The position numbers and the translations under genes were made by a program. DNA of 64,000 nt from Octopus sinensis (lineage: Eukaryota): positions 24,552,001-24,616,000 of the forward strand of contig NC_043006.1 of NCBI RefSeq assembly GCF_006345805.1, written 5' to 3'. The notes under the pieces were generated by a model. That model was not told where the DNA came from, made no database searches, and worked only from the letters and a program-made list of their open reading frames with translations. Below are positions 18,951 to 57,775 of the stretch, in pieces. The stretch's first letter is position 1. Each line of letters starts with the position of its first letter.

Positions 18951-20546
18951 CAAGTGCACCCCAGTTGGTGGCACATAAAGAACATCTGAACGTTGGGCCT
19001 CACAAAGACAAAGTGGCTGAGCTCCTTTCAAGTATTTGGCCTCATTGAGGCAAGGTGGCTGTGTTTTTTTTTCTTTGAATGTTGGGCCTCGTGGCAAAGT
19101 GGCCTCATGGCAAAGTGGCTGAGTTCCTTTCAAATGTTGGGCCTCACTGAGGCAATAACCAAGACCTTTGGCAACATGTTGCACTTGAGAAGAAGACTCA
19201 TCAAGCTGAGCAAAATCGCAGTCATGGCAGATACCAGTGTCATGCTAGTTGCACATAAACACACCCTGGTGTTACACAAATGGCACGTAAAAGTACCCAT
19301 TACACTCTTGGAGAGGTTGGTATTTGGAGGTGCATCCATCCATAGAAAACCATGCCAAATCAGGCTGGAGTCTGGGGCAGCCTTCCAGCATACCAGCCCA
19401 GTTAAACCATCCAACCCATGCCAGCATGAACAACAGGCGTTAAATGAAGATGATGGTGATCTTCATTTGAATAATGATGAAAAAGGTCCCAGTTACTGAA
19501 TTAAAACTTCCAAGATTTTAAGAGAAACAAAAGCAAAAGGCAGGAAGTTTAGGGATGCAATGAAAAATGCATCAACATATGAATTAAAAAAAAAGGTAAA
19601 AGAAAACAGAGACCACAATAAAAAAAATCTAATTGAATTAAAAGAGACATTAATATTGATATAAACTTATGAAGAAACATCAAGTGAAATGTTATTCACT
19701 TTTGTTAGAGAAAATTTTGTAAGTAAAATTTTGTATGATAAGCTAGTTTTGCTATAAGTTTTATTAACAAAGATTTCAGTTTACTGGTTTGTGATGCATC
19801 AGAAATGAAGATGAACAAATGGTCAATAATATTTAAATAGAATTTGGTAGAGTGAAAAGCATTAAATGTCTAAGTTGAGTTGTTAATAAGATTATAATCT
19901 TTCAGACTTTATGTTCACATTTATACCTTGTTGTAATTAGTCTGATCTCTAATCTTCTTTAGGTGTCTTATCCCTGGATACATTCACAGTACCAGACTGG
20001 ATTTGAACAAAGAACAATGGTTTCTAAATTAAGAGTAATAATGCTTTTATCCACTTGGCCAGTCTGGCACTATGGACACTCCCAGTAATATGACATGATC
20101 ATTATCATGATCATCATTATCATTATCATCATCATGGTGGTGATGATGATTGGAGATCAAATCAATTGAAATATGCTGAAAAAAAATTATTAAAAACATC
20201 TCCAAAACTGAGTTTAATGGACTGAAAAATTATAAATTAAAAAAAAAAAGTTTCCATGTAAACTGGTATGTCAGAAACCTCACAAGAAAGAAATATTCCT
20301 AGTTAATAAGTCCTTTAAATCCACCTACACACATAAGACTAAAAGGCATTGATATTTGTTTACAAAACATCTCAGAAAAAACAATATACCTCAGTTGGTG
20401 GAAAATTATTGATTAGAAATAAAAATGGAATTTATTTAAAAATTACCAAGTAAATTTTCAACGGCATAGGGAACAAGGAGCGATACAAAACAAACATCTG
20501 AGATTCCACTCAACTGAAAAATAGTCATTAACAAAAGACAACTCAC

Positions 20547-20600
20547 CACACAGCAACATGCAACAGGAACTTACCTAAAAAAAAAAACCATAAAAACTAT
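20547..20600 (-). promoter_or_regulatory. Candidate recursive splice site with 28-nt RS-exon
   Basis: Minus strand: tttttatggT11-AG|GTAAGT tcctgttgcatgttgctgtgtG|GTGAGT; acceptor AG at 20576-20575, second donor at 20546-20541. Confidence 0.6.
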
Positions 20601-21294: not shown

Positions 21295-23870
21295 TTTCAG
21301 ACGCAAGCACTCTCGTGGATTCCAGGGAGTGCATGGAGGGTATGGTTTTGGACCTAGAAATGAGGAGGGAACTAAACTGTGGGAGTTCTGCAATGCAAAT
21401 GATCTCATGATCTGCAACACTAACTTGAATAAACCAGCCAACCATTTAACTACTTATCAGTCTGGTGAGCACGTAAGTCAGTTTGCCTACCTTTTCACCA
21501 GGCAACAAGATAGATGGATGCTTAAAAATGCAAAGTCTTTTCCAGGTTAAAAGTATACAACCCAACACAGGTTATTAGTTAGTTACTTCAGAATTAGAGC
21601 TAGAAAGATTCGGAGAAGTAAACCAATCTGGAAAAGAAGACTATGGAAGCTCAAAGACCCAGCAGAGAAAAATTTAGATATTTACTTGTGGAAGCTTCTG
21701 ATGAAAGAGAGGAAGGGTTGGAGACATATAGCTTAGAGAATAACTGGAAGTTCTTGAGGGACAATCTACTGAGGGCTATGGACGAAATCTGTGGTTGGTG
21801 CAGAGTCCCAGCTAGATGAAGGGTGATATTTTAATGGAGCAAGGAGGTTGACAGTGTTATAAAAGCAAAAAGACAGGCCTGGAAAGACTGGAAAAACAGT
21901 AGAAGCAGAGAATTATATCAGGTAGCCAAAAGGCAGCTAGGCATCAGGTATATATAGCAAAAGGAGTAGCTGAAGGTAACAGAATTGCAAATGTCCTACA
22001 ACATGAGGATCAGAGGCATGAGGTGTTCAGGATTGCAAAGTAGTATATCAGAGAAAATAGAGATGTGGTAGGTGAGAAATGTGTGCAAATGGATAATGGT
22101 ATGCTTTCACTTAGTGACTCAGAGAAGAAAGATGCATGGAAGTGTCACTATGAAAGGTTACTGAATGTGGAAAATGAATGGGAGAAGGAGAGTTTACCAA
22201 ATATCAAACCAATTGAGGGAGAGGTGATAGTAGCATAATAGATAAGGCAGTTAAGGACATGAAGGCAGGGAAAGCTCCTGGGCCATCAAGAATCACTGCC
22301 AAGATGATTAAAATTTCTGGTTGCATAGGATACAGCTTAGTCCCCCGTATAGTTAATCAGGTTATTCAGGAAGGCACCATCCCCAGCGACTGGTGTAGTA
22401 GCATTATGGTTAGCTGCTACAAGGGCAAAGATGATGCCTTAGATGGAAACAACTACAAAGGTATTAAACTGCTAGACCAAGTCATGAAAATTACTGAGAA
22501 GGTCATAGCTCAATTGATTAGAAATAGAATTAAACTGGATGAAATGCAGTTTTGTTTTGTACCTGGAAAGAGTATCACAGATGCTATCTTCCTAGTGAGA
22601 CAGCTGCAGGAAAAGCACTTGGCCAAAAGTAAGCCATTGTAGTTAGCCTTCGTCAACCTGGAGAAAGCTTTTGACAGAGTTCCCTGCTCTGTTATATGGT
22701 GGTCTCTAAGGAAGTTAGGAGGAGAGGAGAGGCGTGTTAGTGTTGCCCAAGCCATGAATACAGTGATGAATTCAGTGTTCTGGTAGGGATTCACCAGGGC
22801 TCAGTTCTCAGCCCACTCTTATTCATTATAGTCCTCCAGGCTATAACAGAGGAATTCAAGACTTGGTGTCCATGGGAACTGCTATATGCTGATGACCTTG
22901 CTCTTATTACAGAATCTTTAACAAAGTGGAGAAGAAATCCCAGGTATGGAAACAAAACCTGGAATCAAAGGATAACTTTGCTAGGTTAACTTTAAGTTAA
23001 CCTAGCTAAGACAAAAGTGATTATTAGTAAGAAAGAAGATAAAACTTCCTTTCAGTCAAGCAAATGGCCTTGCTCCATATGTAGGAAAGGAGTTAGAAAA
23101 AATTCCATTTGCTGCACCCAGTGTAAACTATGGGTTTATAAGAAATGCAGTGGAATCACAAGGTAGATTAACAGATAAAGCAGTGTTTGTATGTGGCAGA
23201 TGTGCAGGAACAAAAAGCACTAAGAGCACACAGGATTTAGATTCTCTCAAATGCCTAGGAGACTCTCTTGAGGTTGTAGATAGTTTCTGTTACCTAGGTG
23301 ATCAAATTAGCAATGGTGGAGGATGCTCTGAAAGTATTGTTTCTAGAATAAGAATTGGGCGGAGGAAGTTCAGAGAACTATTACCTTTGATGGCAACAAA
23401 AGGACTCTCCCTCATAATGGAAGATAAACTATATGATGCTTGTGTATGAACGGCTATACGCCATGGTAATAAGACATGGGCTCTGAATGCAAAAGACATG
23501 CATAGACTGGAGAGAAATGAAGGTAGTATGCTCTGTTGGATGTGCAACATTTGTGCACATGTACAGCAAAGTGTAAATGTATTGAGAGAAAAGTTGGACA
23601 TAAGAGGAATCAAATGTAGCATACAAGAGAGAAGACTATGCAGGTTTGAACATGTGATGCATATGAATGAGGACAGATGCATAAAGAAGTGCTAATCACT
23701 AAAAGTGGATGGTACCTGTGGAAGATGGAGACCCAGGAAGGCATGGGATGAAGTGGTAAGGATCAATCTCAGGAAGTTGGGGTTCACAGAAGAAATGACA
23801 ATAGACCAAGATATCTGGCAATATGAAGTTCTTGAGAAGACCCGCTCATGTCAGGAAAACTGAGTTCTAG
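21295..23870 (+). mobile_element. Older decayed RTE LINE (EN, RT, PHD insert), sister subfamily of the 35433 element
   Basis: KAPGPSRITAKMIK; NNYKGIKLLDQVMK; AFVNLEKAFDRVP; GVHQGSVLSPLLFIIV; LLYADDL; WPCSICRKG..CTQCKLWV.KKC..CGRC; YLGD. Confidence 0.9.
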
Positions 23871-24299: not shown

Positions 24300-25800
24300 T
24301 GGTTGAAGTTTCTGTTATTTTAATTATTATTGTTTTGTGCTGCTTTGGCAGCAGTTTCAAGTTGTGCTTTCTCTCGATAAAGTCAAGAGATAGCTATGGC
24401 TAAAAGTTATTTTTATTCAGACCTTAGTGGTTCCAGATTCATGAGGATTTCTTTAATTCTTGTGAGGCAATCTTCAAACTTGCCTATGTGGTTTGGGGCA
24501 TCTGGTGGGCAATATGTATTGCATATGACTATATTCTGTTGTCTTATGTATACAATTAGAGTGTCACATACCAAATTTGAGTATGCCAGTAAGACCTGGG
24601 GTGTGAGGTCATCATGGATGTATACAGCAACTCCACCATGGCTCCTTTCCCTTCTGTCTGTTCGCAGTTTGGTACGTGTACTTCTGAGTCCTCTATATCA
24701 AGGCTGAGGTGAGTTTCCACGAGTGCTATGCATAGGGCTTGATTGCATGCAGTAAGATCTCTCAGGAAAGAAATTTTGTTATTTTGATGCAACAGACCCC
24801 CAATATTTAGTAAAAATATTGGGGTGACGGCTGTGCATGCATTAGGGGAGGCCACCCCGTGTCTGTTGACTGTGGTGGTTTTGCATAGTGGTGGGCAAGG
24901 TTCCTTCTTTGTGCTTGGTGTAGCCAGGTCAGCTGCTGGACAATCCTTTGCACCATGCACAAAAAAGACTCCTGCTTAGCTGCTGTGTTGCGCAGAACAT
25001 CTCAGGAGCATACTTCTTTTCTGAATGTTTTCCTGGGAGACAGTTCTTGTCTTTCCTCAGTAAAGCTTTTCCCTTTAAGGCCCCTGTAGTTCTGGCAGGG
25101 TGTCGGGTGGGAAAACTGGCAGTTTTTGCCATCCTCCCCATGCCAGCATTTGCCCTGCAGGTAAAATATACAGGTTCTTGGGTGCCTTCCAGATTTCTTC
25201 TTTCCTGTAGGGCTTTGGATGGTATTGGATCCTACATGGGATTTTCTGTTGTTTGTTTGGTGGGTTGGGGTTTCGGTTTTGGTTGTTTTGCCTTTTCCTT
25301 TTCCTTTCTTTCTTTATTTATTTTTGTTTTCCATCCTTCCTTTTTTCTTCTGTTTTTCTAATGGGGTGAGGTCTCCGTTCCTTTGTAGGACCACTGGCAC
25401 AGGGGGGCTTCCAGTTACTGCTCCCTAGGCTCCCCTATCCTTCTCTGCTTGGTCGTTCACCGGAGTAGGTGATCCATTTTCTTGAGGAACCTCTGGATTA
25501 CAGAGGCTTCCGGGTTTTGTTTCCTTTTCTTTTTCGTCTTCTCCATCCTTATTAGCCTTGCCACAATAATTTTTCATTATGTTATCCAAGGTGTTGATGT
25601 GTGGTCTTATAAGCATATAAGACCGGATAAATTCACTCTTCTTCTGCTCTATCTGGTCAATGGTTCTGTGAAAGCCATTGTTCTTTAGTACAGCAGTGAT
25701 GATGTTGTTTGGCAGATCGCCACTAGCAATCATCCATGCTCGTAGCAGAAGATTTAATTCTTTCTTCTCCCACTTTGGTGCCATCTTCGTTTTTTAAGCC
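24300..25800 (-). mobile_element. CR1-like LINE 5' half: ORF1 (Myb/SANT-like plus CCCH zinc finger) and AP endonuclease start
   Basis: ORF 25784-25425 W..KE..LLL.AW....GF.RT..QI..K; CIFYLQGKCWHGEDGKNCQFSH at about 25170-25105; EN LLNIGGL..ALVETHL..HGGVAVYIHDD. Confidence 0.75.
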
Positions 25801-27214: not shown

Positions 27215-30200
27215 ATATATATATATGTCACCTTGACCAACCAGTCCGTCTTGGCGTCCATTTGACACCACTGGTCACAGCACACTGTCTACTCCTCTCC
27301 GGATCGCGCCTTTCTCATCCATATGATCCCAATCATCCTCCTGAAATAGTAACTCTACTGTCGTGGAGGCCTTCCGAGTGCTTGTATCTGCTCGTGTGGG
27401 TACCACTCAACAACTGTGCGGGTCCACCGATTATTGGTGAGCCGGGCGATATTTCCAGCCCATCTAAACTTGCTGCATGTATATTCTGCGATGACATCCC
27501 TCACGCCGGACTTCTCTCTGATGACCTTGCTACTGATGTGCTCTCTCAACGAGATTCCAAGCATTGACCTTTCCATGGCTGTTTGAACCATTACTAGTAT
27601 CTGCTCTTCTCACTTTGTTGTAGCCCATGTTTCACTACCATATAACATTGCAGGTAGAACTGTTGATGAGTTTGGCACAGGTGGTCCTGTCCAACCTTCC
27701 CTTGAGCACATCCCTTATGCCATTAAATGCCTTCCATCCGGCCCTTACTCTCCATGAGATCTCCTTTTCGATATCTCGGCACATTTTCACTTCCTGTCCC
27801 AGGTAGACATATTCCTTTACTTCCTCTATTTCATCACTGCCGATCACCATTCGACCTGTTGGTACATTGTCTGACCGCATGAACTTCGTTTTCATACGGT
27901 TCATCGAGACCTACTGCAGAGCTTTTGATGTTGATCTCCGTCAGCATGGTCTGAAGCTGATCCATGTTTCAGTGATGATTACGATGTTGTCAGCGAAACA
28001 GAGGTGGATGAGGAGCTCGCCATTGATGTTGACACCACCTTGCCAGTCGATGCCTCTGATGATCTGCTCGAGACATGCGGTGAAAAGTTTTGGAGAGATC
28101 GTATCTCTTTGCTTCACTCCCTTCTCGACCGGCACTTGTACGGGTGATAACAGCAGAGCTATGTCAGTGGTGCATCCGGAATTTGCCTCCCTGAGCAGTT
28201 GCACACATTGCGCCTCGACTCCTTGCCTCTGCAGCGAGTTCAGCACTGTGTTGGTTTTGATGCTGTCGAAGGCCTTCTCATAGTCTAAAAACGCAATGCA
28301 AAGAGGCAGCTTGTACTCATTCACTCGCTCAAGCAGTTGTGTTAGAGTAAATATATGGTCCATCGTGCTGTAGTTCTTCCGGAAGCCTGCTTGTTCCCTC
28401 GGTTGTTTGTCGAGATGTCATGATAACCTGTTCAGAATTATCTTTGTGAACAGCTTGTACACGTGAGACAGCAGGCATATGGGTCGGTAGTTCTTTAGAT
28501 CTTCTCTATCGCCCTTCTTATATAGCAGGATGGTATTTGACTCTTTCCGCTGCGAGGGAATTCTTCCCTCGTCTAGATAGTGCGTGAATCGCTCAGCGAG
28601 GATTTTCCAGAGCTGCTCTCTGCCTGACTTTAATACATCCGATGTTATACCGTCTTTCCCTGGCGCCTTTCTGTTTTTCATCAAGCCAATGGCTCTTTCA
28701 ACCTCACTGACAAGGATAGGTAGCACATTTTCTTCCTGTTGGAGTGGTGGTAACGGCTGGACATTTCTGGTAGATTTAAAGAGCTTGGTGTAGAAGTCTC
28801 TGCAAACTTTTTCCATCTCGCTCTTATCGTTGACTGGTATTCCATCTGTATTTTTCAAGGCCATCACCTCCGATCTATATAGTACCATGTCCCTCTTGAG
28901 GTTCTTCTTTTCCTCTGTGGCCTTCAAGAGCTTCTCCATCCAGTATGCCTCAAAGTCTCTCTTTAGTTGCTGACGAATCACTCTGCTGAGAAGGGAATAT
29001 TCAAGGTGATCTTCAATAGTCCTCTTCATATCTTTCCTCTTCTTGAGTAACTTAATAGTTTCTTCCGAGATTCTTCCCTTCTTCTCTCTTAAACATACTC
29101 CCTTACCCTTCCTTAAACACTCCTTCAGTTTCCCTATCAGTGAGATGTAGTCATTGTCTATGTCATCTCTTTGGCACCAGTTTTCCTGCATGATGGCTTC
29201 CTGCTGCTTCACCTCATTGTAGACTCGGACACGTTTTCCCTTCGAAGCAAATACAGCGCCACCTTCTCCCTCTTCTCGTTGATGACGACCCTCGTCCTCA
29301 CCAGACGATGATCGCTGCCGGTGTTGAATGGTGTCACGACGGAGACGTCATGTAATTTGAGTCGCTTATCAACCAGGATGTAGTCAATCTCACTTCGGTG
29401 CTTAGAGTTCGGCGATATCCAGGTCCATCTCTTCCTCTCCCTCAATAGGCTCTTTCCGATGTAGAGTCGCCTCGCCTCGGCCATGGTAGCCAAACGTTCT
29501 CCTCTCTCGTTTCTCTCTCCTATGCCGAATCTCCTGACGTACTCTTCCCCTTGTCATCCATGTCCAACATTTGCGTTGAAGTCTCCCATCATGACAGTGT
29601 AAGTGAACTTCACAGCCAGCCCTTCGTCTAGCTGTCGATAGAATTCTTCCACCTCGTCGTCATCACTGGCACTTGTGGAAGGTAACAAAATAATTTGATA
29701 AAAAATGTGAATTTTTAATTATTTTCTGAGATTTTACAAAAACACCAAAACACCAATCCATGATGATATGAACTGACAAGAAGCGACCCTCGAAGCCCAT
29801 TCCTTACTTACGATGAATCCGATACCTCCGACCAATCTAGTACCTTCTGCTCTCCCTAATCTCACAGTGCATCCATCTTGCCATCGTATACTCACTTCCT
29901 TCTTGCAACATGTCTCGCACAGCCCTAACACGTCGCACCTGATCTTCTTCCTCTCCTCCATTAGGTGGTTCAGTTCTTTCCACCCTGCCAAGGACCTGCA
30001 GTTGTAGGTGCATATGGCAAGGTTAGTCCTGTTCCATGACGGCCCTCGGGAACCTGTGATTCTTAGCAGCCTCACGTTGCTCGGGTTGTAATCCGCTGTC
30101 ATGGAGTGGCCCAATTGACGTGCAGGGAACTGAGGCCCTTTTCTTTTTCTCTTCATTCTTCATGCTGTTTTAGCCATAAGATGACGTCATCCCACTGGCT

Positions 30201-30375
30201 GGGCAGGCAGGCCGGCATTTTGTTGGATGGCTGTTGACTGTTCAGGAGTTCATCCAACCTTTGATGGGTCTCATTTTTCACTCCACAGGATGTCCAACAG
30301 CACCCTCCTCACCAAGTGAGCCTGGTGGGGTTGTCAGTTTAGTCACCGACATCCCGACCATGCAACAGGTTGTAC
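27215..30375 (-). mobile_element. Near-full-length RTE LINE of a second family (RTE-1-like, no PHD), frameshifted
   Basis: ICTYNCRSLA..DVLGLCET; MGDFNA; EIDYILV; GSDHRLV; KAPGKDGIT; NYRPICLLS; FLDYEKAFDS; GVKQ.DTISPKLF; LCFADNIV; 5' UTR at about 30150-30375; 3' end abuts (AT)n. Confidence 0.9.
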
Positions 30376-30419
30376 TCAATTACATGTTACCAGTCGCACT
30401 CTAGAGTAATCTGACATAA

Positions 30420-30424
<5 letters not shown>

Positions 30425-30451
<27 letters not shown>

Positions 30452-32090
30452 GTGTGTATATATATATATAAAGTGGAGAAGAGAAGGATAATGGTGTGGG
30501 AATCTCTCAACTGGAAGGTTCTGAGAATCCAGGAACACATTCTGCGGACCATGTCAACTTTATTGCTTATATGTGTAGCCCAGCTTATGTTGTTGTCCAC
30601 TGTTACTCCCAAGTCTGTGATGTTGTTAGATGCCATGAGAATTTCACCAGAAGGGAGTATGAGTGTTTCAGAGTGTCCTCCCTTCCAAAGTGGATCAGTT
30701 CGAATTTGTCTTCATTTAGCAACATGTTCTTTTCCGCCCATTGGACAACAGCCAGTAGTCTGACTGAAGGCTTATCCGGTCATCCACGCCATTGATGACC
30801 TTCTGGAGCTTGGAAGCATGAGCGAAGATTCTGATGTTACTGTGTTTGATGATATCAGTAATGTCATTTATGTAGATGATGAAGAGAAGTGGGCCCAACA
30901 CAGTGTCTTGTGGGACACCACTACTGACTTTGTCTGGGCTGGATTTGACTCCTTCGACTACAACATGTTGGGTTCTGTTTGACAGGAAGCATTTGATCCA
31001 CTGCAGCAGCTTTCCAGTGACACCAATATTGGACAACTTTCTCAAAAGGATCTTATGATCAACCCTGTCAAAGGCCTTGCTGAAATCAAGGTAGATAACA
31101 TCAGTGTTGGAACCCTCTCCCAAGGCTCTCAAAATGTCATCAAAATGATGATGCCTGTGCCAGGCAATCCCTTCCATTACGGAATCCATGCTGGTTGGAG
31201 TTCAGCATATTATGACTCTCAAGGAAGTGAGTCATTCGCGATCTCACCACTCTCTCAAATACTTTAATAATATAGGAGGTGAGTGAGATTGGACAGTAAT
31301 TCACAGCAAGGAATTTGTTTCCTTTTTTGAAAACTGGGACAGCAGACTGGGATAGGTTTTCTGGTATATATCCAGCATCCAGTGAGTTCCGCCACAGATT
31401 AACTAGAGTGGGTGCAAGTTGGTGTTGACACATCTTCAAGACACAAGCAGGGAACCTATCGGGACCTACTGCTGAATTATGCTTGATTTTCTTTATTGCT
31501 GCTAAGACATCAGGGGCGCCAAAGGTTATGTCCGATAAAGTATATTGGGGAGTAACATCAATGATACAGCCCAGATCAGTCATATCAGGATATCTGAAAA
31601 CAGAGCAGTATTGTTTCTGCAGCACCTTTCCCATGGTTTTGGCATTGTCTTGAAGAGTGCCATTTTCATCAAACAGAGGGCCAACAGTAGAGCCAGTGAC
31701 TTTGTGTTTTTTTGCAAATGAAAATAACACTTTGGGATTAAGTTTGATCTTCTCAATGGCCCAGGCCTCTTCGGCTCATCTCTGACTATTGATGATAGAC
31801 ATCATGCTGTTTTGGAGGTTATGTTTTTTTAGTCTCTAGTGACGTGATGGCAGTCAGGTTGGTGTGTTGCTGTTGAGAGTATTTCAGTTTGTTGATTTTT
31901 TTGTTAATTCTTTTGATTTTCCTGATGAGTGTTTTTCTATTTCTAGGGATTCTGCACTTAGATTTGTTTACAGATCTTAATGGGGTGTGTTTTGCACATA
32001 TGTTTGTAATAGTGTCTACAATGACTGCCAGGACTTTTTGATGTTAGTTGGTGTGTATGTGTGCGTGAAGGACCAATCGACTTGTGCAAG
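30425..32090 (-). mobile_element. CR1-clade LINE RT fragment
   Basis: SAVGPDRFP; VPVFKKG..NYCPISLTS; NQHGFRNGRDCL; DVIYLDFSKAFDRVDH; SGVPQDTVLGPLLFIIYIND. Confidence 0.9.
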
Positions 32091-34560: not shown

Positions 34561-35519
34561 GTTTCCATATTAGTTACATCAGTTCATGTAGCAAGTGTTT
34601 TCAGAGAGATACAAATTTAGCTGAAATCATATTCTACATGTTGTGTACTTCAACTCTACACTAACGACTAGTAGAAATCAACAAGGAAACTTCTAGGATT
34701 ACTGACCTCACATCATATCCTACTATCCTAAAAAAAGGAAACATTAGATAATGTAGATCAAATGTAGACAAAATGTCCCAGAGAAAATAACAGGATGGCT
34801 CTGGTTACTATGAGTGGAATGTCTTTGATCATAAGTCTGCTTGTTCTACACAACATTTGTTCACTAATATTAAGTTCCTCTTGCAAATAAAATATTTTGC
34901 TGATGGTGAGGGCCTTGATAACCTAGTCCAGATAATATTTTAAATAGAACCAGGCTGGACTGGTTCAACCATATTAATGAAGTAACCTAAATAAATAAAC
35001 TCCAATGAGAATTCAATCCTCTGTAAGGCTTTCCTCACTGTAACCATTCACTCCACAATGGATGTAGTATATATCTCAACTATTTTAGCTTCAGTCCTAA
35101 GACTCACAAGCCACTGAACTTACAGTGGGGTTTCTGAATTACCAATAAGCTACATAATGTGCAAAACTTCCAAATTTTACTAAGGGAACAAATTAAAAAT
35201 ATGTTTTTTGTACTTTGATAGGTCATTTTCTTGCAATAGTTCATCAGATATAACAGTATATACTTAGCATTTGCAGACACAACTTTTTTGCTGCTTCAGT
35301 TTATTCTGATAAGCACACCTAATCTATAGTTTCAGTGCTTGTACATAGTAACAAGAACAAAACTAAAACAGTGAAATAACATTTACAAACTGACTTCACA
35401 CAAAATAGATATTTTTTTCACTTTCTTTTCAGGTACATGACACGGCTGCCCCTCATCCCAGGGTCTCAGATGCCCACACCTCCCACACCCTCAGAGTTGG
35501 CACACTCAATGTTGGCACA

Positions 35520-38510
35520 TTGAAAGGTAGGTCTGGAGAGATTGTAGAGCTGCTTGAACGGAGACGTGTGGATGTATGTTGTATCCAGGAAGTAAGGTGG
35601 AGAGGAGGTTCCGCTAGGCTCCTCACAGGCAAGGAACACAGGTACAAGATTTTCTGGGCAGGGAACACTGACGGGGTCGGGGGCGTGGGTATACTTCTTG
35701 CAGAGAAATGGGTAGGTAAGGTAATTGAGGTAGTCAGAGTAAGTGACAGAGTAATTAAAATTTGATTAGTCCTTCACCACAGGACAGTTACCATCATCTC
35801 AGCATATGCCCCTCAACCAGGGCTACCGGAAGGACAAAAAGACCAATTCTATGACACCCTATTGCGAACTACCTCGTTGACAAATGACAGTGACCTTCTC
35901 TTCGTGGCAGGTGATTTCAATGGACATGTCGGACGGCATGTCGGGGGCTTCCATGGAGGCTACGGTTTCGGCTCTCGTAATGAGGAGGGAACCAGGCTGC
36001 TGGAGTTCTGCGATGCAAATGACCTTATGGTCTGCAATACCAACTTCAGGAAACTCTACTCTCACCTAGTCACCTACCGTTCTGGCAGACACACCAGCCA
36101 GATTGACTACATCCTTGCCAGAAAAAGGGAAAGAGGGCTGATTATAAATGCCAAAACCTTTCCAGGCGAAGAATGCACTCCTCAACATAGATTAGTAGTT
36201 AGCGACTTCAGGATCAGAGCTAAATGGTTGCCCAGAAGAAGACCTGCTTGGAGGAGAAGGGTCTGGAAGCTTAAAGATCCTGCAAATGGACAGAGATTTA
36301 GAGACATACTACTCGAAGCCTTTGACGAAATAGAAGGGGATATAGCTTCACTTAATGTGGAAGACAACTGGAGATTTCTACGGGACAATCTGCTGACAGC
36401 CACTGACCAGATCTGTGGATGGAGCAAAGTACCATCTCAACCCAGAGTAACATGGTGGTGGAACACTGTGGTTGACAGGGCTATTAGACAAAAGAGACAG
36501 GCTTGGAAGGACTGGAAGAACGGTGGTAGCAGGGAATTGTATCAGACAGCCAGAAGGGAAGCTAGGAGACAGGTTTATTTAGCCAGAGGGGAAGCGGATA
36601 AGAAAAAATTTGCCAATGTTCTGCGCCATGAGGATGAAAGACTTGAGGTATTTCGTGTTGCAAGGCAGTGTGTGAGAGAGAATCGTGATGTGGTAGGAGA
36701 GAAGCATGTTCGCATGGATGATGGTTCACTTGCGCTAAATGAGGATGCAAAGAGAGAGGTTTGGAGATGCCACTATGAAAGGTTGCTGAATAAAGAAAAT
36801 GAATGGGATAAGGAGAGTCTGCCGAATGTTGACCCAACAGAGGGACCAGCTATCCGAGTTGATAGTTCCGTGGTAGCTAAGGCAATTAGAAGCATGAAGA
36901 CAGGGAAAGCCCCAGGCCCATCAGGAATTACTGCAGAGATGCTCAAAATATCTGGCAGTGTCGGCTAAAGCCTAGTCACCCGTATAGTCAACCAGGTGAT
37001 ACACGAAGGAGTCATACCCAATGACTGGTGTAGCAGCGTACTAGTCAACTGCTACAAAGGTAAAGGTGATGCCCTAGATACAAATAATTACAGAGGTATC
37101 AAGCTGTTGGATCAGGCAATGAAGGTTACGGAGAGGGTCATAGCCCAACTAATTAGAGAGAGAGTTAGTTTAGATGAGATGCAGTTTGGGTTTGTGCCAG
37201 GGAAAAGCACCACTGATGCTATATTCCTGGTAAGGCAGCTGCAGGAGAAATACCTAGCCAAAGATAAGCCCCTGTACCTGGCTTTCGTTGACATGGAGAA
37301 AGCCTTTGATAGGGTCCCCCGATCCCTCATCTGGTGGGCAATGAGGAAACTAGGGATAGATGAATGGCTGGTGAGGGCTGTGCAAGCTATGTACAGAGAT
37401 GCCGTAAGCAAGGTTAGGGTTGGCAACATGTACACAGAAGAATTCAAAGTAGAGGTTGGGGTCCACCAGGGTTCAGTACTCAGCCCCCTCCTATTTATCA
37501 TAGTCCTCCAGGCAATAACAGAGGAATTCAAGACAGGTTGCCCCTGGGAGCTCCTCTATGCTGACGACCTCGCTCTAATTGCTGAGTCACTATCAGAACT
37601 GGAGGAGAAGTTCCAGGTGTGGAAGGAGGGTTTAGAATCGAGGGGCCTTAGAGTCAACCTAGCTAAAACCAAAGTACTAATAAGTAGAAAGGTAGGCAAT
37701 CCACAAATGTCCTCAGGAAGATGGCCCTGCTCGATCCGTAGAAAAGGTGTAGGTAGAAACTCTATAAGATGTACCCAGTGTAAGCTATGGACACATAAGA
37801 GGCGCAGCAATGTCAAAGGTAGGCTAACTGGGAAGATAGTTTTTATATGTGGCAGATGCTCGGGAGCATTGACCTCCGAAAATCTGCAGAAAACAACTTC
37901 CGTCACTTTCCAGGGGAAAAAATTAGAAGTAGTTGATAGTTTCCGTTATCTAGGTGACCAAGTCAGTAGTGGGGGTGGGTGCGCTGAGAGTGTAACTGCT
38001 AGAATAAGAATAGCCTGGGCAAAGTTTAGGGAGCTCTTACCTCTGCTGGTGACTAAAGGCCTCTCGCTCAGAGTAAAGGGCAGACTGTATGATGCATGTG
38101 TTCGAACTGCCATGCTACATGGCAGTGAAACATGGGCCGTGACTGCTGAGGACATGCGTAAGCTCATGAGGAATGAAGCCAGTATGCTCCGATGGATGTG
38201 TAATGTCAGTGTACTTACTCGACAGAGCATTAATTCCCTAAGAGAAATGTGGTACCTAAGAAGCATCAGTTGTTGCGTGCAAGAGAGACGATTGCGCTGG
38301 TATGGTCATGTGGCGAGAATGGATGAAGATAGGTGTGTGAGAAAGTGCCAATCCCTAGCAGTTGAGGGAACCCATGGAAGAGGTAGACCCAGGAAAACCT
38401 GGGACGAGGTGGTGAAGCACGACCTTCGAACGTTAGGTCTCACCATGGAAATGACTAGAGACCGAGACCTATGGAAGTATGCTGTGCGTGTGAAGACCCG
38501 GCAAGACTAG
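35520..38510 (+). pseudogene. RTE ORF2 (AP endonuclease, RT, PHD insert) with two premature stops
   Basis: ORFs 35520-35765, 35862-36968 and 36996-38510 share one frame; stops TGA 35763 and TAA 36966; motifs IQEVRW, GDFNGH, IDYIL, QGSVLSP, YADD, YLGD. Confidence 0.92.
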
Positions 38511-38691: not shown

Positions 38692-39085
38692 GGTGGCACA
38701 TAAGAAAACCATCTGAACGGGACCGTAGCCAGTACCGCATCGACTGGCCTCCGTGCTGTGGGCACGTAACAAACACCGTCCGAGCGTGGCCGTCTGCCAG
38801 CCTCGTCTGGCACCTGTGTCGGTGGCACATAAAAACAGCATCCAAGCGTGGCCGTCTGCCAGCCTCGTCTGGCACCTGTGTCGGTGGCACATAAAAACAC
38901 CATCCGAGCGTGGCCGTCTGCCAGCCTCGTCTGGCACCTGTGTCGGTGGCACATAAAAACACCATCCAAGCGTGGCCGTCTGCCAGCCTCGTATGGCACC
39001 TGTGTCGGTGGCACATAAAAACACCATCCGAGCGTGGCCGTTCGCCAGCCTCGTCTGGCACCTGTGTCGGTGGCACATAAAATCA
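38692..39085 (+). repeat. 62-bp tandem repeat in the RTE 3' UTR (about 6.5 units)
   Basis: ggtggcacat recurs at 38821, 38883, 38945, 39007 and 39069 (62-bp period), with diverged units at 38692 and about 38758. Confidence 0.95.
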
Positions 39086-39344
39086 CCCACTACACTCTCG
39101 GAGTGGTTGGCGTTAGGAAGGGCATCCAGCTGTAGAAACACTGCCAGATCTGACTGGCCTGGTGCAGCCTTCGGGCTCCCCAGACCCCAGTTGAACCGTC
39201 CAACCCATGCTAGCATGGAAAGCGGACGTTAAACGATGATGATGATTTTTTCCCTTTCAAATAACGGAGTCTTATTTTTTGCAATTTTTAAAAAAAATTT
39301 TAACACAACACTAGGCCTAGAGAAATTTATACCTTTTTATAAAT

Positions 39345-43400: not shown

Positions 43401-43501
43401 TACTAGTGCCAATCCTACCACAGTGCTTATTTTTATCATTTTTTTCAGCTACAAAATTCGTTTAACATCAGCTTTCTAATCTTAATAAACCAATTACTTA
43501 C

Positions 43502-43592
43502 CGAATATTTCATGAGAATTGAACTGAATGTAATTTTCAGGCGAACAATTATTCGAACTTACCTGAAACAAACAGGAATGAGAGAAATTAAG
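43502..43592 (-). promoter_or_regulatory. Candidate recursive splice site with 61-nt RS-exon
   Basis: Minus strand: CTTAAT branch-like, tttctctcattcctgtttgttt, CAG|GTAAGT (43565-43557), 61-nt segment ending TTCG, then a second GTAAGT (43501-43496). Confidence 0.7.
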
Positions 43593-45004: not shown

Positions 45005-45830
45005 TACATGGTTCATGACCTGACATTTTGTCCAATGTCACTTTGTCCAATGTCACTTCATCTGATGATTTTTTTGTCCAATGACTTTTGTCCAATTTTA
45101 AATAAACTCTTTAGAAAACAAGGTGAACATTAAAACCAAATAATCATTGAGAATTTTAGTGATAGGTGTCAAGTAAAATACTGTGGGAAAATGTATTTTT
45201 AAAAAAGTCCATTTAAAAAAGTAATAAGACATAACTAATGATCTATTAGAATCACTTAAAACTGATGCAAATTATATGCCATACACTTAAAAAAAAATCA
45301 ACTTTTCTCATTGACCTATATTCAATGACCAATCTTTTGAGGGTTTTGGTTATTCTTCGATATCGTGTACATGAGTTTGACAGATCTTGAAGAATTTGAG
45401 TCATTTTACCTTGAATGAACCTTTCCTCTTCCTTCAGAGTTTTGATTAATTTTCAAATATTCAAATGTGCTCCACCCACTGAACGTTTTATCGCTAAATG
45501 AAACCCTTCCACAGCATTATTTGTTCTGGGAAGATTTTGAAGAATACGTTGATAAACATTCCAGAATTCAGAGTCTTTATTGTATTTTTCTTTGAGGCCT
45601 AAATCTGTAATTTTTTGAAATACCGATTGGCTAAAATGAAACAAATATGCCACGGTAGATGAATTAGGGAATGATGAATTAAATGCCTTGTGAACTGTAA
45701 CTTTGAAATCTGCCATGAGATCAAGTGGATACGCATTAGGTTGCATAATTTTCAATTTTCTTTTGTTTTTGGCCAATACTATGAACTTTGTCATTTCATG
45801 ATGGGTAAATTAAAAATGTGTGCACTAAAT
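45005..45830 (-). mobile_element. Mutator (MULE) transposon remnant with TIR
   Basis: P.DLMADF..AFNSSFP..FHFSQSVFQKI..LGLK..WNVY.R..LPRTNNAVEGFH; repeated ttgtccaatg motifs at 45025-45095. Confidence 0.8.
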
Positions 45831-52426: not shown

Positions 52427-52575
52427 AATACGACAGGCTTCTTTCAGTTTCCGTCTACCAAATCTACTCACAAGGCTTTGGTTGGCCCGAGGCTATAGTA
52501 GAAGACACTTGCCCAAGGTGCCATGCAGTGGGACTGAACCCGGAAGTAAGCAAGATACTTACCACACAGCCACTC
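52170..52575 (-). mobile_element. tRNA-derived SINE (1850 head/body, alternative tail)
   Basis: Reverse complement of the 60960-61350 element: tactt..tgtttcagtcatttgactgtggccatgctgg..; gaagacacttgcccaaggtgcc. Confidence 0.8.
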
Positions 52576-52585
52576 CTATATATAC

Positions 52586-52639
<54 letters not shown>

Positions 52640-52651
52640 TACACACACACA

Positions 52652-53645
52652 GTGTAGTTTGTTTTGTACTCTGTTTTTTTCGTTTAGGTCCGTTTCCACG
52701 TTTGTTTTTACGTTTTCGTTTCTCGTTGAGTTCTACGTCTATTTGTGGTGTCCTGTACTCACGTATATATATTTATATATGCATGTATATATACATGTAG
52801 ATGTAGGTACGTACATATATGTATGTATGTATGCATATATTTTATTTATAACACTATTGTATGACTGAGCGCCCTCGCGTCGATTCGATTCGTTTTCGTT
52901 TCATCTCCTCCAAGGAAGTTTTGTTATTTATAATTGTGACGCGAAACTCTACAACTCTTTGCTTGACCTTCTCTTCCTTCCCTATCTTCCTCTCACTCCT
53001 CCTCATCTCTCTCTCTCACAGCCGCTTGTCTTCCTCTATCTCTCTCACTCCTCCTCATCTCTTTCACAGCGGACGAGTTGCTTCCTTTCACCACTGGCAT
53101 TCTAACAGTGAACACTGTTCTTCTAGCGCTCTTAGAATCTTTCCTCATGTAGGCCAGCATTAAGGCCCTCATTGTCTGTTTTTTTGTTTGTTTTATTTCT
53201 TGTACTGTATTTTTCGTACTTGTAATTTTATTCTGTATTTTTATTTTGTATTTTATTTTGTAATTTTATTTGTATCGTTTTTTTGTCACCTGTTTAACTT
53301 TCCTTGTTTTTACCCCTCTGCGAAGCAATTTTATTTAATTCCTTCGCAGGAATGACTAGTTCCACGAGTCGTGTTCTGTCCAACCTTCGAAACACACTGG
53401 AGTTGAACTAGGGACAGCTGATGAAGGGGATTTTTCCTTGTGTAGTTTGTTTTGTACTGTTTTTTTTTCGTTTAGGTCCGTTTCCACGTTTGTTTTTACG
53501 TTTTCGTTTCTCGTTGAGTTCTATGTCTATTTGTGGTGCCCTGTACTCACGTATATATATTTATATATGCATGTATATATACATGTAGATGTAGGTACGT
53601 ACATATATGTATGTATGTATGCATATATTTTATTTATTACACTAT
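52652..53645 (+). mobile_element. Non-coding retrozyme-like or PLE pLTR-like element: 788-bp unit plus 206-bp terminal direct repeat
   Basis: 52652-52857 is nearly identical to 53440-53645; CpG-rich interior; flanked by (CA)n/(TA)n; carries the permuted hammerhead. Confidence 0.75.
53371..53429 (+). ncRNA. Non-circularly permuted hammerhead ribozyme candidate
   Basis: gtg-T-T-ctgtcc / aac / cttc-GAAA-cac / linker / ggacag-CTGATGA-a-gggg: all core nucleotides present; 6-bp stem I, 4-bp stem II, 4-bp stem III. Confidence 0.7.
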
Positions 53646-53760
53646 ATATAAATATATGTATATATATATATATATATATACAATTGCAGCGCAGAAGGTG
53701 TTTATAAGCCATTTAAGAAACAGACAAAACCGTTAGATTCACTTCAACACTTAAATTTAA

Positions 53761-54634: not shown

Positions 54635-54691
54635 ACATCTATACATATCTATATATATATATATATATATATATACATCTATCTATCTATC

Positions 54692-54732
<41 letters not shown>

Positions 54733-54782
54733 TCTATCTATCTATATATATATATATATATACACACATCTATCTATCTATC

Positions 54783-54815
<33 letters not shown>

Positions 54816-55068
54816 CTATCTATCTATCTATATATATATATATATACACACATCTATCTATCTATCTATATATATATATATATACACACACATCTATCTA
54901 TATATATATACACACATATATCTATATATATATATACACACATCTATCTATCTATCTATATATACACACATCTATCTATCTATCTATATATACACACATC
55001 TATCTATCTATCTATATATACACACATCTATCTATCTATCTATATATACACACATCTATCTATCTATC

Positions 55069-55128
<60 letters not shown>

Positions 55129-55147
55129 TCTATCTATCTATATATAT

Positions 55148-55179
<32 letters not shown>

Positions 55180-55242
55180 CACACACATCTATCTATCTAT
55201 ATATATATATATATATTATACACACATCTATCTATCTATCTA

Positions 55243-55281
<39 letters not shown>

Positions 55282-55409
55282 CTATCTATCTAATATATAT
55301 ATATATACACAATCTATCTATCTATCTATATATATATATATATATATATATTACACACATCTATCTATATATATATATATATACACACATCTATCTATCT
55401 ATCTATCTA

Positions 55410-55480
<71 letters not shown>

Positions 55481-55600
55481 CACATCTATCTATCTATCTA
55501 TCTATATATATATATATACACATACATATATACACATATATATATATACATCTCTATATTTATATAGAGATATACATCTATATATGTGTAGAGTGTCAGG
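54635..55600. repeat. Compound microsatellite array (CACACA + (TCTA)n + (TA)n units)
   Basis: Recurrent cacacatctatctatctatatata unit with variable internal copy numbers. Confidence 0.95.
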
Positions 55601-56338: not shown

Positions 56339-56772
56339 TCAAACATTTAATTTCAGAGAGAATTTTTTTATGAAGTGTAGTTCCTTTACCTTTCGATATT
56401 GTGGATCGTCCCGTGCACATTTGTAAAAGGGAAAGCTTTGGAACTTTCCATCTCCGCATATTTCTAGATGCTTACTCAATGGAATCTTTTGTAGCTCTTC
56501 TTGCCGGATATGTTGCCTGTGAATTCATGCACGTTGGCAGAGGGAGTTATTTGTTTTGCCAATGTAATTTTCTTTACAGCTTGGGCAGGTAATGCAGTAT
56601 ACGAGATTTTGTGTTTTACAGTTCATATCTGCATATATTTTAAAAATGGATCCATTCTTGAACTTCACATGGGAACCACTTTCTATGTACTTGAAGTTGT
56701 TGGTATTGTTACATGTTCTACATCTATCTCCACATTCTTTTACTACGAACTCTGGTTTATTCTCTGGTTCAG
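56339..56772 (-). pseudogene. Penelope-like GIY-YIG endonuclease C-terminus (not in the ORF track)
   Basis: EFVVKECGDRCRTC..MNCKTQNLVYCITCPSCKENYIGKTNNSLCQRA*IHRQHI..HLEIC..KELHFIKKFSLKLNV*; one internal TGA. Confidence 0.85.
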
Positions 56773-56829
56773 ATCATATATACATATATACATATATATG
56801 TATACATACATACATATATATATATATAT

Positions 56830-57379: not shown

Positions 57380-57775
57380 TGGCACATAAAAGCACCAGCC
57401 TCGCCTGGCCCCCGTGCCGGTAGCATGTAAAAGCACCATCCGTTCGTGGCCGTTGCCCGCCTCGTCTGGCTCCCGTGCCGGTGGCACGTAAAAAGCACCA
57501 TCCGATCATGGCCGTTGCCAGCCTCGCCTGGCCCCCGTGCCAGTGGCACGTAAAAAGCACCATCCATCCGTGGCCGTTTGCCAGCTCCGTCTGGTACCTG
57601 TGCGGGTGGCACATAAAAAGCACCCACTACACTCACGGAGTGGTTGGCATTAGGAAGGACATCCAGCCGTAGAAACACTGATGCAGCTTTCTGGCTTCAC
57701 AGACCCCAGTTGAACCGTCCAACCCATGCTAGCATGGAAAGCGGACGCTAAATGATGATGATGATGATGATATGT
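57380..57775 (+). mobile_element. RTE-derived 3' UTR/tail with about 4 hairpin units
   Basis: gtgccagtggcacgtaaaaagcacc units; tail aacccatgctagcatggaaagcggacgctaaatgatgatga. Confidence 0.8.

What the first reader, a model, noticed from the sequence alone, without database searches (positions are those of the whole stretch)
43496..43592. Textbook recursive splice site with 61-nt RS-exon (minus strand)
Seen on the minus strand: branch-like CTTAAT, a 22-nt AG-free pyrimidine-rich tract, then CAG immediately followed by a perfect GTAAGT. A second perfect G|GTAAGT lies 61 nt later. The 61-nt segment retains 3 CpGs despite the CpG-poor background. It is 3n+1 long and has stops in two frames (the third reads VSSNNCSPENYIQFNSHEIF). 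It is not inside a recognisable TE. Knowledge: AG|GT ratchet points followed by a cryptic RS-exon donor are the architecture of recursive splicing in long Drosophila and vertebrate introns. Inference: the window is part of a giant intron of a minus-strand gene that is removed stepwise. I am not aware of recursive splicing being characterised in cephalopods.
Basis: partly seen in the sequence, partly recalled or inferred. Interest (0 to 1): 0.78.

Follow-up and report, generated by a model that had tools for sequence, protein, structure and literature searches.

The report
Candidate recursive splice site, untested
The sequence really does carry a back-to-back "end-of-intron / start-of-intron" signal followed by a short throw-away exon, and a second such site lies 23 kb away on the same strand. 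This is the known design for removing a very long intron in steps, but no RNA data, host gene or species identity could be obtained to show that it is used.

Summary
On the minus strand there is TTAAT (branch-like A 25 nt upstream), a 21-nt tract that is 19/22 pyrimidine and AG-free, then CAG|GTAAGT (GT at 43562). A 61-nt segment follows and ends in G|GTAAGT (GT at 43501).

This is beyond chance. Only 3 AGGTAAGT octamers occur in the window, all on the minus strand. Two of them (43562, and a new site at 20574) have a strong pyrimidine tract plus a second consensus donor within 61 nt. The in-window empirical probability is 5e-6 to 3e-5, and Markov simulations expect 0.007-0.05 such sites per 128 kb.

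Site 1 is not repeated in the window and no TE protein domain was detected next to it. Its open frame matches no protein among 5.8 billion clusters. It is the only exon-like unit on the minus strand.

Both strands otherwise show only TE-derived coding remnants, which fits a giant intron or intergenic DNA.

The architecture meets all sequence-level criteria for a Drosophila-type ratchet point with a cryptic RS-exon. Usage, host gene, strand of transcription, conservation and the "octopus" origin remain untested.

Best reading: a genuine recursive splice site, confidence about 0.55. It would be a new member of a known kind. Interest is moderate.

The parts
43587..43592 (-). Branch-point-like CTTAAT. 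TTAAT fits yUnAy, with the branch A at 43588, 25 nt from the acceptor G. A second candidate, CTCAT (A at 43579), lies 16 nt from the AG.
43566..43586 (-). Polypyrimidine tract. 19 of the 22 bases before the AG are C/T, and the AG-free zone is 36 nt.
   Evidence: The acceptor score of 7.1 is reached by 0.35% of AGs in the window.
43563..43565 (-). CAG acceptor of the ratchet point (splice after 43563).
43557..43562 (-). Ratchet-point donor GTAAGT, which would be regenerated after the upstream exon is joined to 43562. CAG|GTAAGT is the full 9-nt U1 consensus.
43502..43562 (-). 61-nt putative cryptic RS-exon. It is 3n+1 long, has stops in 2 frames, 31% GC and 3 CpG.
   Evidence: No protein in the database contains its open frame.
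43496..43501 (-). RS-exon donor TCG|GTAAGTAA, used for exon definition. It would compete with the ratchet-point donor.
   Evidence: score 4.8; the only other donor scoring at least 4 within +-400 nt
20575..20600 (-). Second site, acceptor side: TTTAT branch-like motifs (A 16 and 25 nt upstream), a run of 11 T, then TAG.
20569..20574 (-). Second ratchet-point donor, GTAAGT, directly after the AG. Normalised juxtaposed-motif score is 0.860, the highest in the window.
20547..20574 (-). 28-nt putative RS-exon of the second site, also 3n+1 long.
20541..20546 (-). Donor GTG|GTGAGT that closes the 28-nt segment (score 6.0).

Best explanation
Position 43563/43562 (minus strand) is a recursive splice site, also called a ratchet point. 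It sits inside a very long intron of a minus-strand gene whose exons lie outside the window.

Inferred mechanism:
1. As the polymerase passes, U2AF/U2 recognise the branch site, pyrimidine tract and CAG. U1 binds the G|GTAAGT 61 nt downstream. Together they define the 61-nt segment as a short exon.
2. The upstream exon is spliced to 43562. This removes the 5' part of the intron as a lariat and places GTAAGT directly after the exon, which recreates a strong 5' splice site.
3. That regenerated donor outcompetes the RS-exon donor and is spliced to the next acceptor. The next acceptor is probably the second ratchet point at 20574, 23 kb on, and then the true downstream exon. The 61-nt segment therefore never appears in mRNA.
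4. If the segment were included, it would shift the reading frame or introduce a stop, so it would act as a poison exon.

What is shown: the sequence signals, their joint improbability, and the second site on the same strand. What is inferred: transcription, strand, order of events and outcome.
For: Sequence anatomy:
- Branch-like A at 25 nt, 19/22 pyrimidines, a 36-nt AG-free zone, CAG|GTAAGT, and a second GTAAGT donor at +61.
- These are the only strong acceptor and donors within +-400 nt.

Non-randomness:
- Two of the three AGGTAAGT octamers in the window carry at least 17/22 upstream pyrimidines plus a GTRAGT within 150 nt. P = 3e-5 (all-position null) or 5e-6 (AG-position null).
- Markov simulations expect 0.007-0.05 such sites per 128 kb, against 2 observed.
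- Both sites are on the minus strand, 22,988 nt apart.

Fit to the described class (PMC8605326): a juxtaposed acceptor|donor, a short cryptic exon of about 50 nt closed by a downstream donor, exon content out of frame, several ratchet points per long intron, and location in long introns.

Base rates (PMC2773006 Table 2):
- Chance RP-motif density is about 0.1 per 100 kb per strand in all animals studied.
- On the sense strand of >50-kb introns it is 0.5-2.2 per 100 kb in the five invertebrates tested, including sea urchin.
- The window has 2 per 64 kb on one strand.

Not an annotated coding exon: no protein in 5.8 billion clusters shares even three 5-mers with its open frame.

Context fits an intron: only TE-derived ORFs occur on either strand, and no other exon-like unit occurs on the minus strand.
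Against: - There is no RNA evidence of any kind.
- No host exon was found, so the window could be intergenic.
- No compositional or poly(A)-signal strand asymmetry was seen.
- By juxtaposed motif alone, the plus strand also has one high-scoring site (16870, CAG|GTAAGC, score 0.839). It lacks a downstream donor and lies in a broadly CT-rich stretch next to a repeat. The strand bias is therefore 2:1 on motif alone and 2:0 only when the RS-exon donor is required.
- The 28-nt segment at the second site is short for exon definition.
- In vertebrates the motif alone predicts usage poorly: sense/antisense ratios are about 1.
- The organism is unverified. The CpG o/e of 0.34 shows heavy CpG depletion, so it is unclear which base rate applies.
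- The negative peptide search is weakened because the species' proteome may not be in the database.
- Thresholds were chosen after seeing the site.
Confidence: 0.55

Rival explanations
1. It is an ordinary short exon that is not recursively spliced: a cassette, poison or UTR exon, or an exon of an unannotated minus-strand transcript or lncRNA. It just happens to begin with GTAAGT. Alternatively, CAG|GTAAGT is simply the consensus donor of an 88-nt non-coding exon starting at the weaker acceptor at 43650, and 43501 is an alternative donor.
For: - A strong acceptor plus a strong donor 61 nt apart is exactly what any internal exon looks like.
- One frame is open.
- A weaker acceptor (score 2.8) lies 88 nt upstream.
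- Three CpGs are retained.
- Real exons are far more common in genomes than recursive sites.
Against: - An exon starting with GTAAGT by accident has a probability of about 1e-3 per exon (composition). Here two candidate exons on the same strand both start with GTAAGTTC.
- No database protein contains the peptide.
- The length is 3n+1 with stops in two frames.
- The 88-nt alternative has stops in all three frames, and its 3' end would be a 19/22 pyrimidine tract, which is unusual for exon sequence.
- Even if the exon is expressed, an exon with a regenerated donor at its 5' end is the 'expressed RS-exon' class, as in Ubx m1/m2 (PMC8605326).
Confidence: 0.2
2. It is a chance juxtaposition of splice-like motifs in AT-rich, T-tract-rich non-coding DNA, possibly intergenic, with no function.
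For: - The count of AGGTAAGT (3) is what base composition predicts.
- 4-5% of all positions have at least 17/22 upstream pyrimidines.
- A genome of gigabase size will contain some such compound sites by accident.
- The feature was picked post hoc by a reader looking for it.
- A plus-strand site scores similarly on the juxtaposed motif.
- No sign of a host gene was found.
Against: - The joint probability for two compound sites among three octamers is 5e-6 to 3e-5 by in-window empirical nulls.
- Simulations expect at most 0.05 such sites, against 2 observed.
- The published chance density of about 0.1 per 100 kb per strand gives about 0.06 per strand of this window, even before a downstream donor is required.
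Confidence: 0.15
3. It is part of an unrecognised non-autonomous repeat (SINE, MITE or satellite-derived) whose consensus happens to contain PPT-AGGTAAGT. In that case the signal is a property of a repeat family, not of this locus.
For: - The window is very TE-rich: three LINE-like elements, LTR-retroelement remnants, a mariner fragment and 62-nt tandem units.
- Genome-wide copy number could not be checked.
- Both sites share AGGTAAGTTC.
Against: - Neither site has another copy in the 64-kb window, and the two sites show no similarity beyond the 10-mer.
- There are no terminal inverted or direct repeats around site 1.
- The 22-nt core found only two matches in the JGI metagenome collection. 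Both are one unrelated locus with different flanks.
Confidence: 0.07

Closest known systems
Drosophila intronic ratchet points with cryptic RS-exons (Ubx, kuz, Bx; more than 500 sites; summarised in PMC8605326 and PMC6110457)
   Same: - A juxtaposed (Y)n-CAG|GTAAGT motif.
- A short downstream cryptic exon (about 50 nt there; 61 and 28 nt here) closed by a second donor.
- Exon content out of frame.
- More than one site per intron, spaced by kilobases to tens of kilobases.
- TE-rich, exon-free surroundings compatible with a long intron.
   Different: - No saw-tooth, junction-read, lariat or conservation evidence here.
- The host gene is unknown.
- The organism is apparently a CpG-depleted marine invertebrate, said to be an octopus but unverified, and not an insect.
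- The ratchet-point donor and the RS-exon donor have identical GTAAGT cores. Which one wins cannot be predicted from the intronic part alone.
Vertebrate recursive splice sites with RS-exons (CADM2, ROBO2, etc.; Sibley et al. 2015, as reviewed in PMC5126111)
   Same: - A YAG|GT site plus a downstream competing donor.
- An RS-exon that carries premature stops or a frameshift, so inclusion would trigger decay.
- Location in very long genes.
   Different: In vertebrates the motif is not enriched over the antisense strand (PMC2773006), so motif-only prediction is weak there. Here the motif is the perfect 9-nt consensus, and two sites occur in 64 kb.
Expressed RS-exons and poison/cassette microexons (e.g. 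Ubx m1/m2; EJC-repressed RS-exons, PMC6224609)
   Same: A short exon whose first six bases form a consensus donor. The length is not a multiple of three.
   Different: There is no evidence that the segment is ever in mRNA, and no protein in the database contains its translation.
Decoy exons and pseudoexons in long introns (PMC7373989, PMC7175933)
   Same: An intronic pair of strong acceptor and donor that can engage the spliceosome without contributing to mRNA.
   Different: Decoy exons and pseudoexons do not need a donor fused to the acceptor. That fusion is the specific extra feature here.

Membership tests
Recursive splice site / ratchet point with RS-exon | [quoted passage not shown] | tested here: met
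   TTAAT branch-like A at 25 nt, 19/22 Y, 36-nt AG-free zone, CAG|GTAAGT. Normalised motif scores are 0.824 (site 1) and 0.860 (site 2). Apart from the plus-strand site at 16870 (0.839), no other AGGT on either strand exceeds 0.79.
Recursive splice site / ratchet point with RS-exon | A downstream 5' splice site that defines a short cryptic exon (about 50 nt in flies) | tested here: met
   G|GTAAGT at +61 for site 1 and G|GTGAGT at +28 for site 2.
Recursive splice site / ratchet point with RS-exon | RS-exon content that is out of frame or stop-containing, so it must be skipped | tested here: met
   61 nt and 28 nt are both 3n+1. Site 1 has stops in two of three frames.
Recursive splice site / ratchet point with RS-exon | Lies on the sense strand of a long intron (more than about 10 kb in flies; long genes in vertebrates) | tested here: inconclusive
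   No host exon was found on either strand. Only TE-derived ORFs are present, and there is no strand skew. This is compatible with an intron longer than 64 kb, but equally with intergenic DNA.
Recursive splice site / ratchet point with RS-exon | Ratchet-point donor at least as strong as the RS-exon donor | tested here: inconclusive
   Both donors have GTAAGT. The final strength of the ratchet-point donor depends on the last bases of the unknown upstream exon. The RS-exon donor has a poor exonic part (TCG), with a score of 4.8 against 8.6 for CAG|GTAAGT in the genomic context.
Recursive splice site / ratchet point with RS-exon | RNA intermediates: exon-to-RP junction reads, saw-tooth intron coverage, recursive lariats | not testable with these tools
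   No RNA-seq access. Exact-protein look-ups of neighbouring ORFs in public assemblies found nothing.
Recursive splice site / ratchet point with RS-exon | Evolutionary conservation focused on the acceptor|donor core, with a poorly conserved RS-exon | not testable with these tools
   No related eukaryotic genome is on hand. The metagenome scan with the 22-nt core returned only a non-homologous locus.
Ordinary protein-coding exon | Its translation is present in annotated or predicted proteins | tested here: not met
   No candidate in 5.8 billion clusters shares three 5-residue words with the open frame. Caveat: it is not shown that the database covers this species' proteome.
Interspersed repeat / transposable element | Multiple copies, terminal repeats, or a TE protein domain | tested here: not met
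   Tested within the window only: no second copy, no TIRs, no TE domain in adjacent ORFs. Genome-wide copy number was not testable.

The most novel reading that the evidence does not exclude
The window is part of an intron longer than 64 kb in a lophotrochozoan (reportedly cephalopod) gene. The intron would be removed in at least three steps through two Drosophila-style ratchet points (43562 and 20574), each with its own cryptic RS-exon. This would be the first case of RS-exon-dependent recursive splicing outside insects and vertebrates. Together with the motif enrichment reported for sea urchin, it would argue that the mechanism is ancestral to bilaterians and is re-used wherever introns become very long.
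Probability: 0.4. Interest if true: 0.55.

Novelty: new member of a known kind. Interest (0 to 1): 0.42.

Why it matters
Recursive splicing has been demonstrated only in Drosophila and vertebrates. Motif enrichment alone has been reported for a few other insects and for sea urchin (PMC2773006). The held literature has nothing on molluscs or cephalopods.

Cephalopod genomes are large, repeat-rich and have long neuronal genes, so how their giant introns are removed accurately is a real question. A validated site here would extend the mechanism to a third bilaterian superphylum. It would also give concrete coordinates (two sites, 23 kb apart) for a cheap RNA-seq or RT-PCR test.

The mechanism itself is well known, and specialists would expect it in long invertebrate introns, so the surprise value is moderate.

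Tried and rejected
1. Locating the window or its neighbourhood in public assemblies by exact ORF products (the RT ORF and two ORFs flanking the site): nothing on record.
It was repeated as a 52-aa composite and returned no candidate.
3. Looking for host-gene exons:
   - PWM-based exon scans at two stringencies.
   - Pfam on all 276 stop-to-stop ORFs of at least 60 aa on both strands.
   - Only TE domains came up (RVT_1, Exo_endo_phos, zf-CCHC, Transposase_1, PHD inside the LINE, and a CCCH finger inside a LINE-like element).
4. Rfam and tRNA scans for strand-informative intronic RNAs: none found.
5. Strand asymmetry of base composition, poly(A) signals and branch-like motifs: none found. The minus strand has fewer donor-like motifs than the plus strand (23 vs 40 at score 4.8 or above). 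This is the direction reported for sense strands in PMC2773006 Table 3, but TE content confounds it and I give it no weight.
6. Verifying the organism through the LINE RT:
   - Best hits are 73-74% identical, from an ENA metagenome contig and a mislabelled MAG.
   - Named relatives are Hydractinia, Branchiostoma and Mercenaria.
   - 'Octopus' stays unverified.
7. Metagenome scan for an orthologue: only a convergent, non-homologous site was found.
8. CpG retention as evidence of constraint: too weak.
9. One literature query was badly designed and uninformative. PMC4471124 is not held.

Full report
**1. The observation**

Reading the minus strand confirms every sequence statement in the finding:
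- CTTAAT lies at 43592-43587.
- A tract at 43586-43566 follows. Together with the C of CAG it makes 22 bases, of which 19 are pyrimidines.
- There is no AG for 36 nt upstream.
- CAG at 43565-43563 is followed at once by GTAAGT at 43562-43557.
- Exactly 61 nt after the first GT there is TCG|GTAAGT (GT at 43501-43500, hexamer ending at 43496).

The 61-nt segment (43562-43502) is 31% GC and has three CpGs. It has stops in two frames, and the third frame reads VSSNNCSPENYIQFNSHEIF. TTAAT fits the yUnAy branch consensus with its A 25 nt from the acceptor G, and CTCAT offers a second candidate at 16 nt.

**2. Is it more than chance?**

The window is 37% GC with CpG o/e 0.34. AGGTAAGT occurs three times, all on the minus strand (60299, 43564, 20576). 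That is about what composition predicts, so the octamer alone means nothing. The combination with flanking signals is different:
- Only 0.35% of AG dinucleotides in the window have an acceptor score as high as this one.
- Only 4-8% of positions have a donor of score 4.8 or more within 20-150 nt downstream.
- This gives roughly 6e-4 such compound sites expected per window.
- Simulated sequences from Markov models of order 1, 3 and 5, trained on the window, gave 0, 0 and 0.007 sites of this quality per 128 kb. For a relaxed definition they gave 0.007-0.05.

**3. A second site**

One of the other two octamers has the same design. On the minus strand it reads ...tttttatagtttttatgg(T)11AG|GTAAGTTCCTGTTGCATGTTGCTGTGTG|GTGAGT.
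- Its GT is at 20574.
- It has a 28-nt segment, again 3n+1, and a consensus donor at 20546.
- It lies 22,988 nt downstream of the first site in the direction of minus-strand transcription.

The window itself gives a null that keeps its compositional patchiness. A fraction of 0.0034 of all positions (0.0013 of AG positions) has at least 17/22 upstream pyrimidines together with a GTRAGT within 10-150 nt. The probability that two or more of three octamers qualify is 3e-5 or 5e-6 respectively. The two sites share only AGGTAAGTTC. Neither has another copy in the window.

Scored with a normalised juxtaposed-motif PWM, the results are:

| Site | Strand | Score |
|---|---|---|
| 20574 | minus | 0.860 |
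| 16870 (CAG\|GTAAGC) | plus | 0.839 |
| 43562 | minus | 0.824 |
| Next best AGGT site on either strand | plus | 0.79 |

The plus-strand site has no downstream donor. It sits in a stretch that is CT-rich on both sides and lies next to a repeat. I regard it as compositional, but it does weaken the strand argument to 2:1 on motif alone.

**4. Surroundings**

The window is eukaryotic and full of transposon remnants:
- A LINE with endonuclease, RT and a PHD finger on the plus strand at about 35.4-38.5 kb, with one in-frame stop.
- Further LINE-like elements on the minus strand at about 31.8-27.3 kb and 25.8-24.4 kb.
- A further LINE copy on the plus strand at about 21.3-23.7 kb.
- Gag/protease/RT remnants at about 7.9-6.1 kb on the minus strand.
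- A mariner-type fragment.
- 62-nt tandem units and long (TA)n arrays.

Pfam scans of all 276 stop-to-stop ORFs of at least 60 aa on both strands gave only TE-type domains. PWM-based exon scans found no other convincing exon. On the minus strand, 43562-43502 is the only unit with a good acceptor, a good donor and an open frame. Rfam and tRNA scans were empty. There is no base-composition or poly(A)-signal asymmetry between the strands.

The window therefore looks like either a slice of a very long intron or intergenic DNA. I could not decide which.

**5. Is the segment a known exon or a repeat?**

A search with the open frame, embedded in its 33-aa ORF and repeated to reach the minimum length, found no protein among 5.8 billion clusters that shares even three 5-residue words. 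It is therefore not part of any predicted protein in that collection.

The weight of this negative is limited. A search with the window's LINE RT returned relatives of at most 73-74% identity. None of the best 120 is named after an octopus (the best hit sits on an ENA metagenome contig). I cannot show that the source species' proteome is in the database, nor confirm that the window is cephalopod.

Around site 1 there are no inverted or direct terminal repeats.

A scan of JGI metagenome contigs with the 22-nt core TCCTGTTTGTTTCAGGTAAGTT found two contigs of one locus:
- The flanks are unrelated to the window, and that genome is not CpG-depleted (o/e 0.92).
- The locus carries TACTAAC, a pyrimidine tract and CAG|GTAAGT.
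- It is an independent site of the same design in another eukaryote, not an orthologue.

**6. Mechanism**

The best-supported explanation is recursive splicing, as worked out in Drosophila and vertebrates:
1. The acceptor and the downstream donor define the 61-nt segment as an exon.
2. The upstream exon is ligated to 43562, which regenerates a GTAAGT donor at the junction.
3. That donor is then used in place of the RS-exon donor. The segment and the next stretch of intron are removed together.
4. The second site at 20574 would repeat the cycle.

This reading follows the description in PMC8605326: tandem acceptor|donor, a short cryptic exon of about 50 nt with its own donor, poorly conserved out-of-frame exon content, donor competition, and several ratchet points in one intron such as kuz. 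It also follows PMC6110457. The signals and their improbability are shown here. Transcription, strand, order and outcome are inferred.

**7. Base rates**

Shepard et al. (PMC2773006, Table 2) counted high-scoring ratchet motifs in introns longer than 50 kb, per 100 kb:

| Group | Strand | Motifs per 100 kb |
|---|---|---|
| All animals studied | antisense | 0.07-0.12 |
| Vertebrates | sense | 0.08-0.14 (0.9-1.5x antisense) |
| Bee | sense | 0.48 |
| Sea urchin | sense | 0.54 |
| Beetle | sense | 0.81 |
| Mosquito | sense | 1.03 |
| Fruit fly | sense | 2.2 |

Two sites in 64 kb on one strand (3.1 per 100 kb) is fly-like. It is about 30 times the chance density. In invertebrates, most sense-strand motif matches therefore exceed background. 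No lophotrochozoan was in that study.

The main uncertainties are which regime the source species follows and whether the minus strand is transcribed here. I put the recursive-site reading at about 0.55.

**8. Rivals**

- *An ordinary short exon that merely begins with GTAAGT, or an 88-nt non-coding exon ending in the consensus CAG|GTAAGT with an alternative donor at 43501* (about 0.2). The accident would have to happen twice on one strand. The 88-nt alternative would end in a 19/22 pyrimidine tract and has stops in all frames. An expressed exon with a donor at its 5' end would still belong to the 'expressed RS-exon' class.
- *Pure chance* (about 0.15). This is argued against. It stays alive because the selection was post hoc, because of the plus-strand look-alike, and because no host gene is visible.
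- *An unrecognised repeat family* (about 0.07). Nothing in the window supports it, but genome-wide copy number is untested.

**9. Comparison with what is known, and novelty**

The closest known systems are Drosophila intronic ratchet points with cryptic RS-exons and vertebrate RS-sites with RS-exons.
- All sequence-level membership criteria are met.
- The location criterion is inconclusive.
- The RNA and conservation criteria could not be tested.

The held literature contains no paper linking recursive splicing with octopus, and only unrelated papers for cephalopod or mollusc.

If validated, this would be a new member of a known kind in a new phylum. That is useful and easy to test, but not mechanistically new. 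Interest: 0.42.

Noticed in passing
window 20541-20600 (minus strand): A second recursive-splice-like site: (T)11 AG|GTAAGT with GT at 20574, a 28-nt segment, then G|GTGAGT. It is on the same strand as the reported site and 22,988 nt downstream of it. It has the highest juxtaposed-motif score in the window (0.860).
   Followed up: yes
window 16845-16880 (plus strand): CT-rich tract followed by CAG|GTAAGC (GT at 16870), with normalised motif score 0.839. There is no donor within 150 nt downstream. The whole neighbourhood is pyrimidine-rich and adjoins a sequence repeated at about 48.2-48.5 kb. It is probably compositional, but it is a plus-strand look-alike.
   Followed up: partly
L002 1038-1059 (minus) and L003 1087-1108 (JGI metagenome contigs Ga0209629_10017943, Ga0209628_10310026): An unrelated eukaryotic locus shares the exact 22-nt core. 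It shows a canonical TACTAAC branch site, a pyrimidine tract and CAG|GTAAGT, so it is an independent ratchet-point-like site in a genome that is not CpG-depleted (CpG o/e 0.92). It is likely host DNA in a metagenome.
   Followed up: partly
window 35409-38510 (plus strand): A nearly full-length LINE with endonuclease, RT (RVT_1, E=4e-32) and a PHD-type finger. It is interrupted by one in-frame stop at 36966-36968. The closest database proteins are only 73-74% identical. Named relatives are from Hydractinia, Branchiostoma and Mercenaria, and none is named Octopus, so the source organism remains unverified.
   Followed up: partly
protein P0020 (hit): A 353-aa protein annotated as 'MAG: hypothetical protein [Herbaspirillum sp.]' is 74% identical to this animal LINE reverse transcriptase. 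It is probably eukaryotic contamination in a bacterial metagenome-assembled genome.
   Followed up: no
window about 27300-31800 and 24400-25800 (minus strand); 21300-23700 (plus strand): Further decayed LINE-like elements. There are RT and endonuclease ORF fragments on the minus strand at 27.3-31.8 kb. An element at 24.4-25.8 kb has a CCCH zinc-finger ORF upstream of its endonuclease. Another copy of the 35-38 kb LINE family lies at 21.3-23.7 kb.
   Followed up: partly
window about 6100-7900 (minus strand): Remnants of an LTR-type retroelement: a CCHC zinc knuckle, a DTGS-type protease motif and an RT fragment in successive ORFs.
   Followed up: no
window 38761-39087 and 57395-57624; related copies near 1.9-2.2, 19.1-19.5, 49.7-50.0 and 54.1-54.4 kb: GC-rich 62-nt units in tandem (5.3 and 3.7 copies, 85-94% matches). 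They recur across the window in both orientations and look like an abundant SINE- or satellite-like family of this genome.
   Followed up: no
window 54640-55585: A (TA)n array of about 950 bp (476 copies, 76% matches), plus many shorter TA/TG/AT microsatellites throughout the window.
   Followed up: no
window 10071-10415 vs 17754-18098; 52428-52870 vs 53360-53710: Pairs of near-identical segments within the window. The first pair gives nearly identical 115-aa ORF translations. They indicate recent duplications or young repeat copies.
   Followed up: no
window 45255-45809 (minus strand): A reading frame of about 185 aa, interrupted by one stop, with a MULE-transposase-like pattern (…AYLFHFSQSV…). 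It has no Pfam hit at E<=0.01 and lies 1.9 kb upstream of the reported site on the same strand. It is most likely a decayed DNA-transposon fragment rather than a host exon.
   Followed up: partly
window 56528-56773 (minus strand): An ORF with a GIY-YIG-like motif (…LVYCITCPSCKENYIGKT…), suggestive of a Penelope-like element remnant.
   Followed up: no
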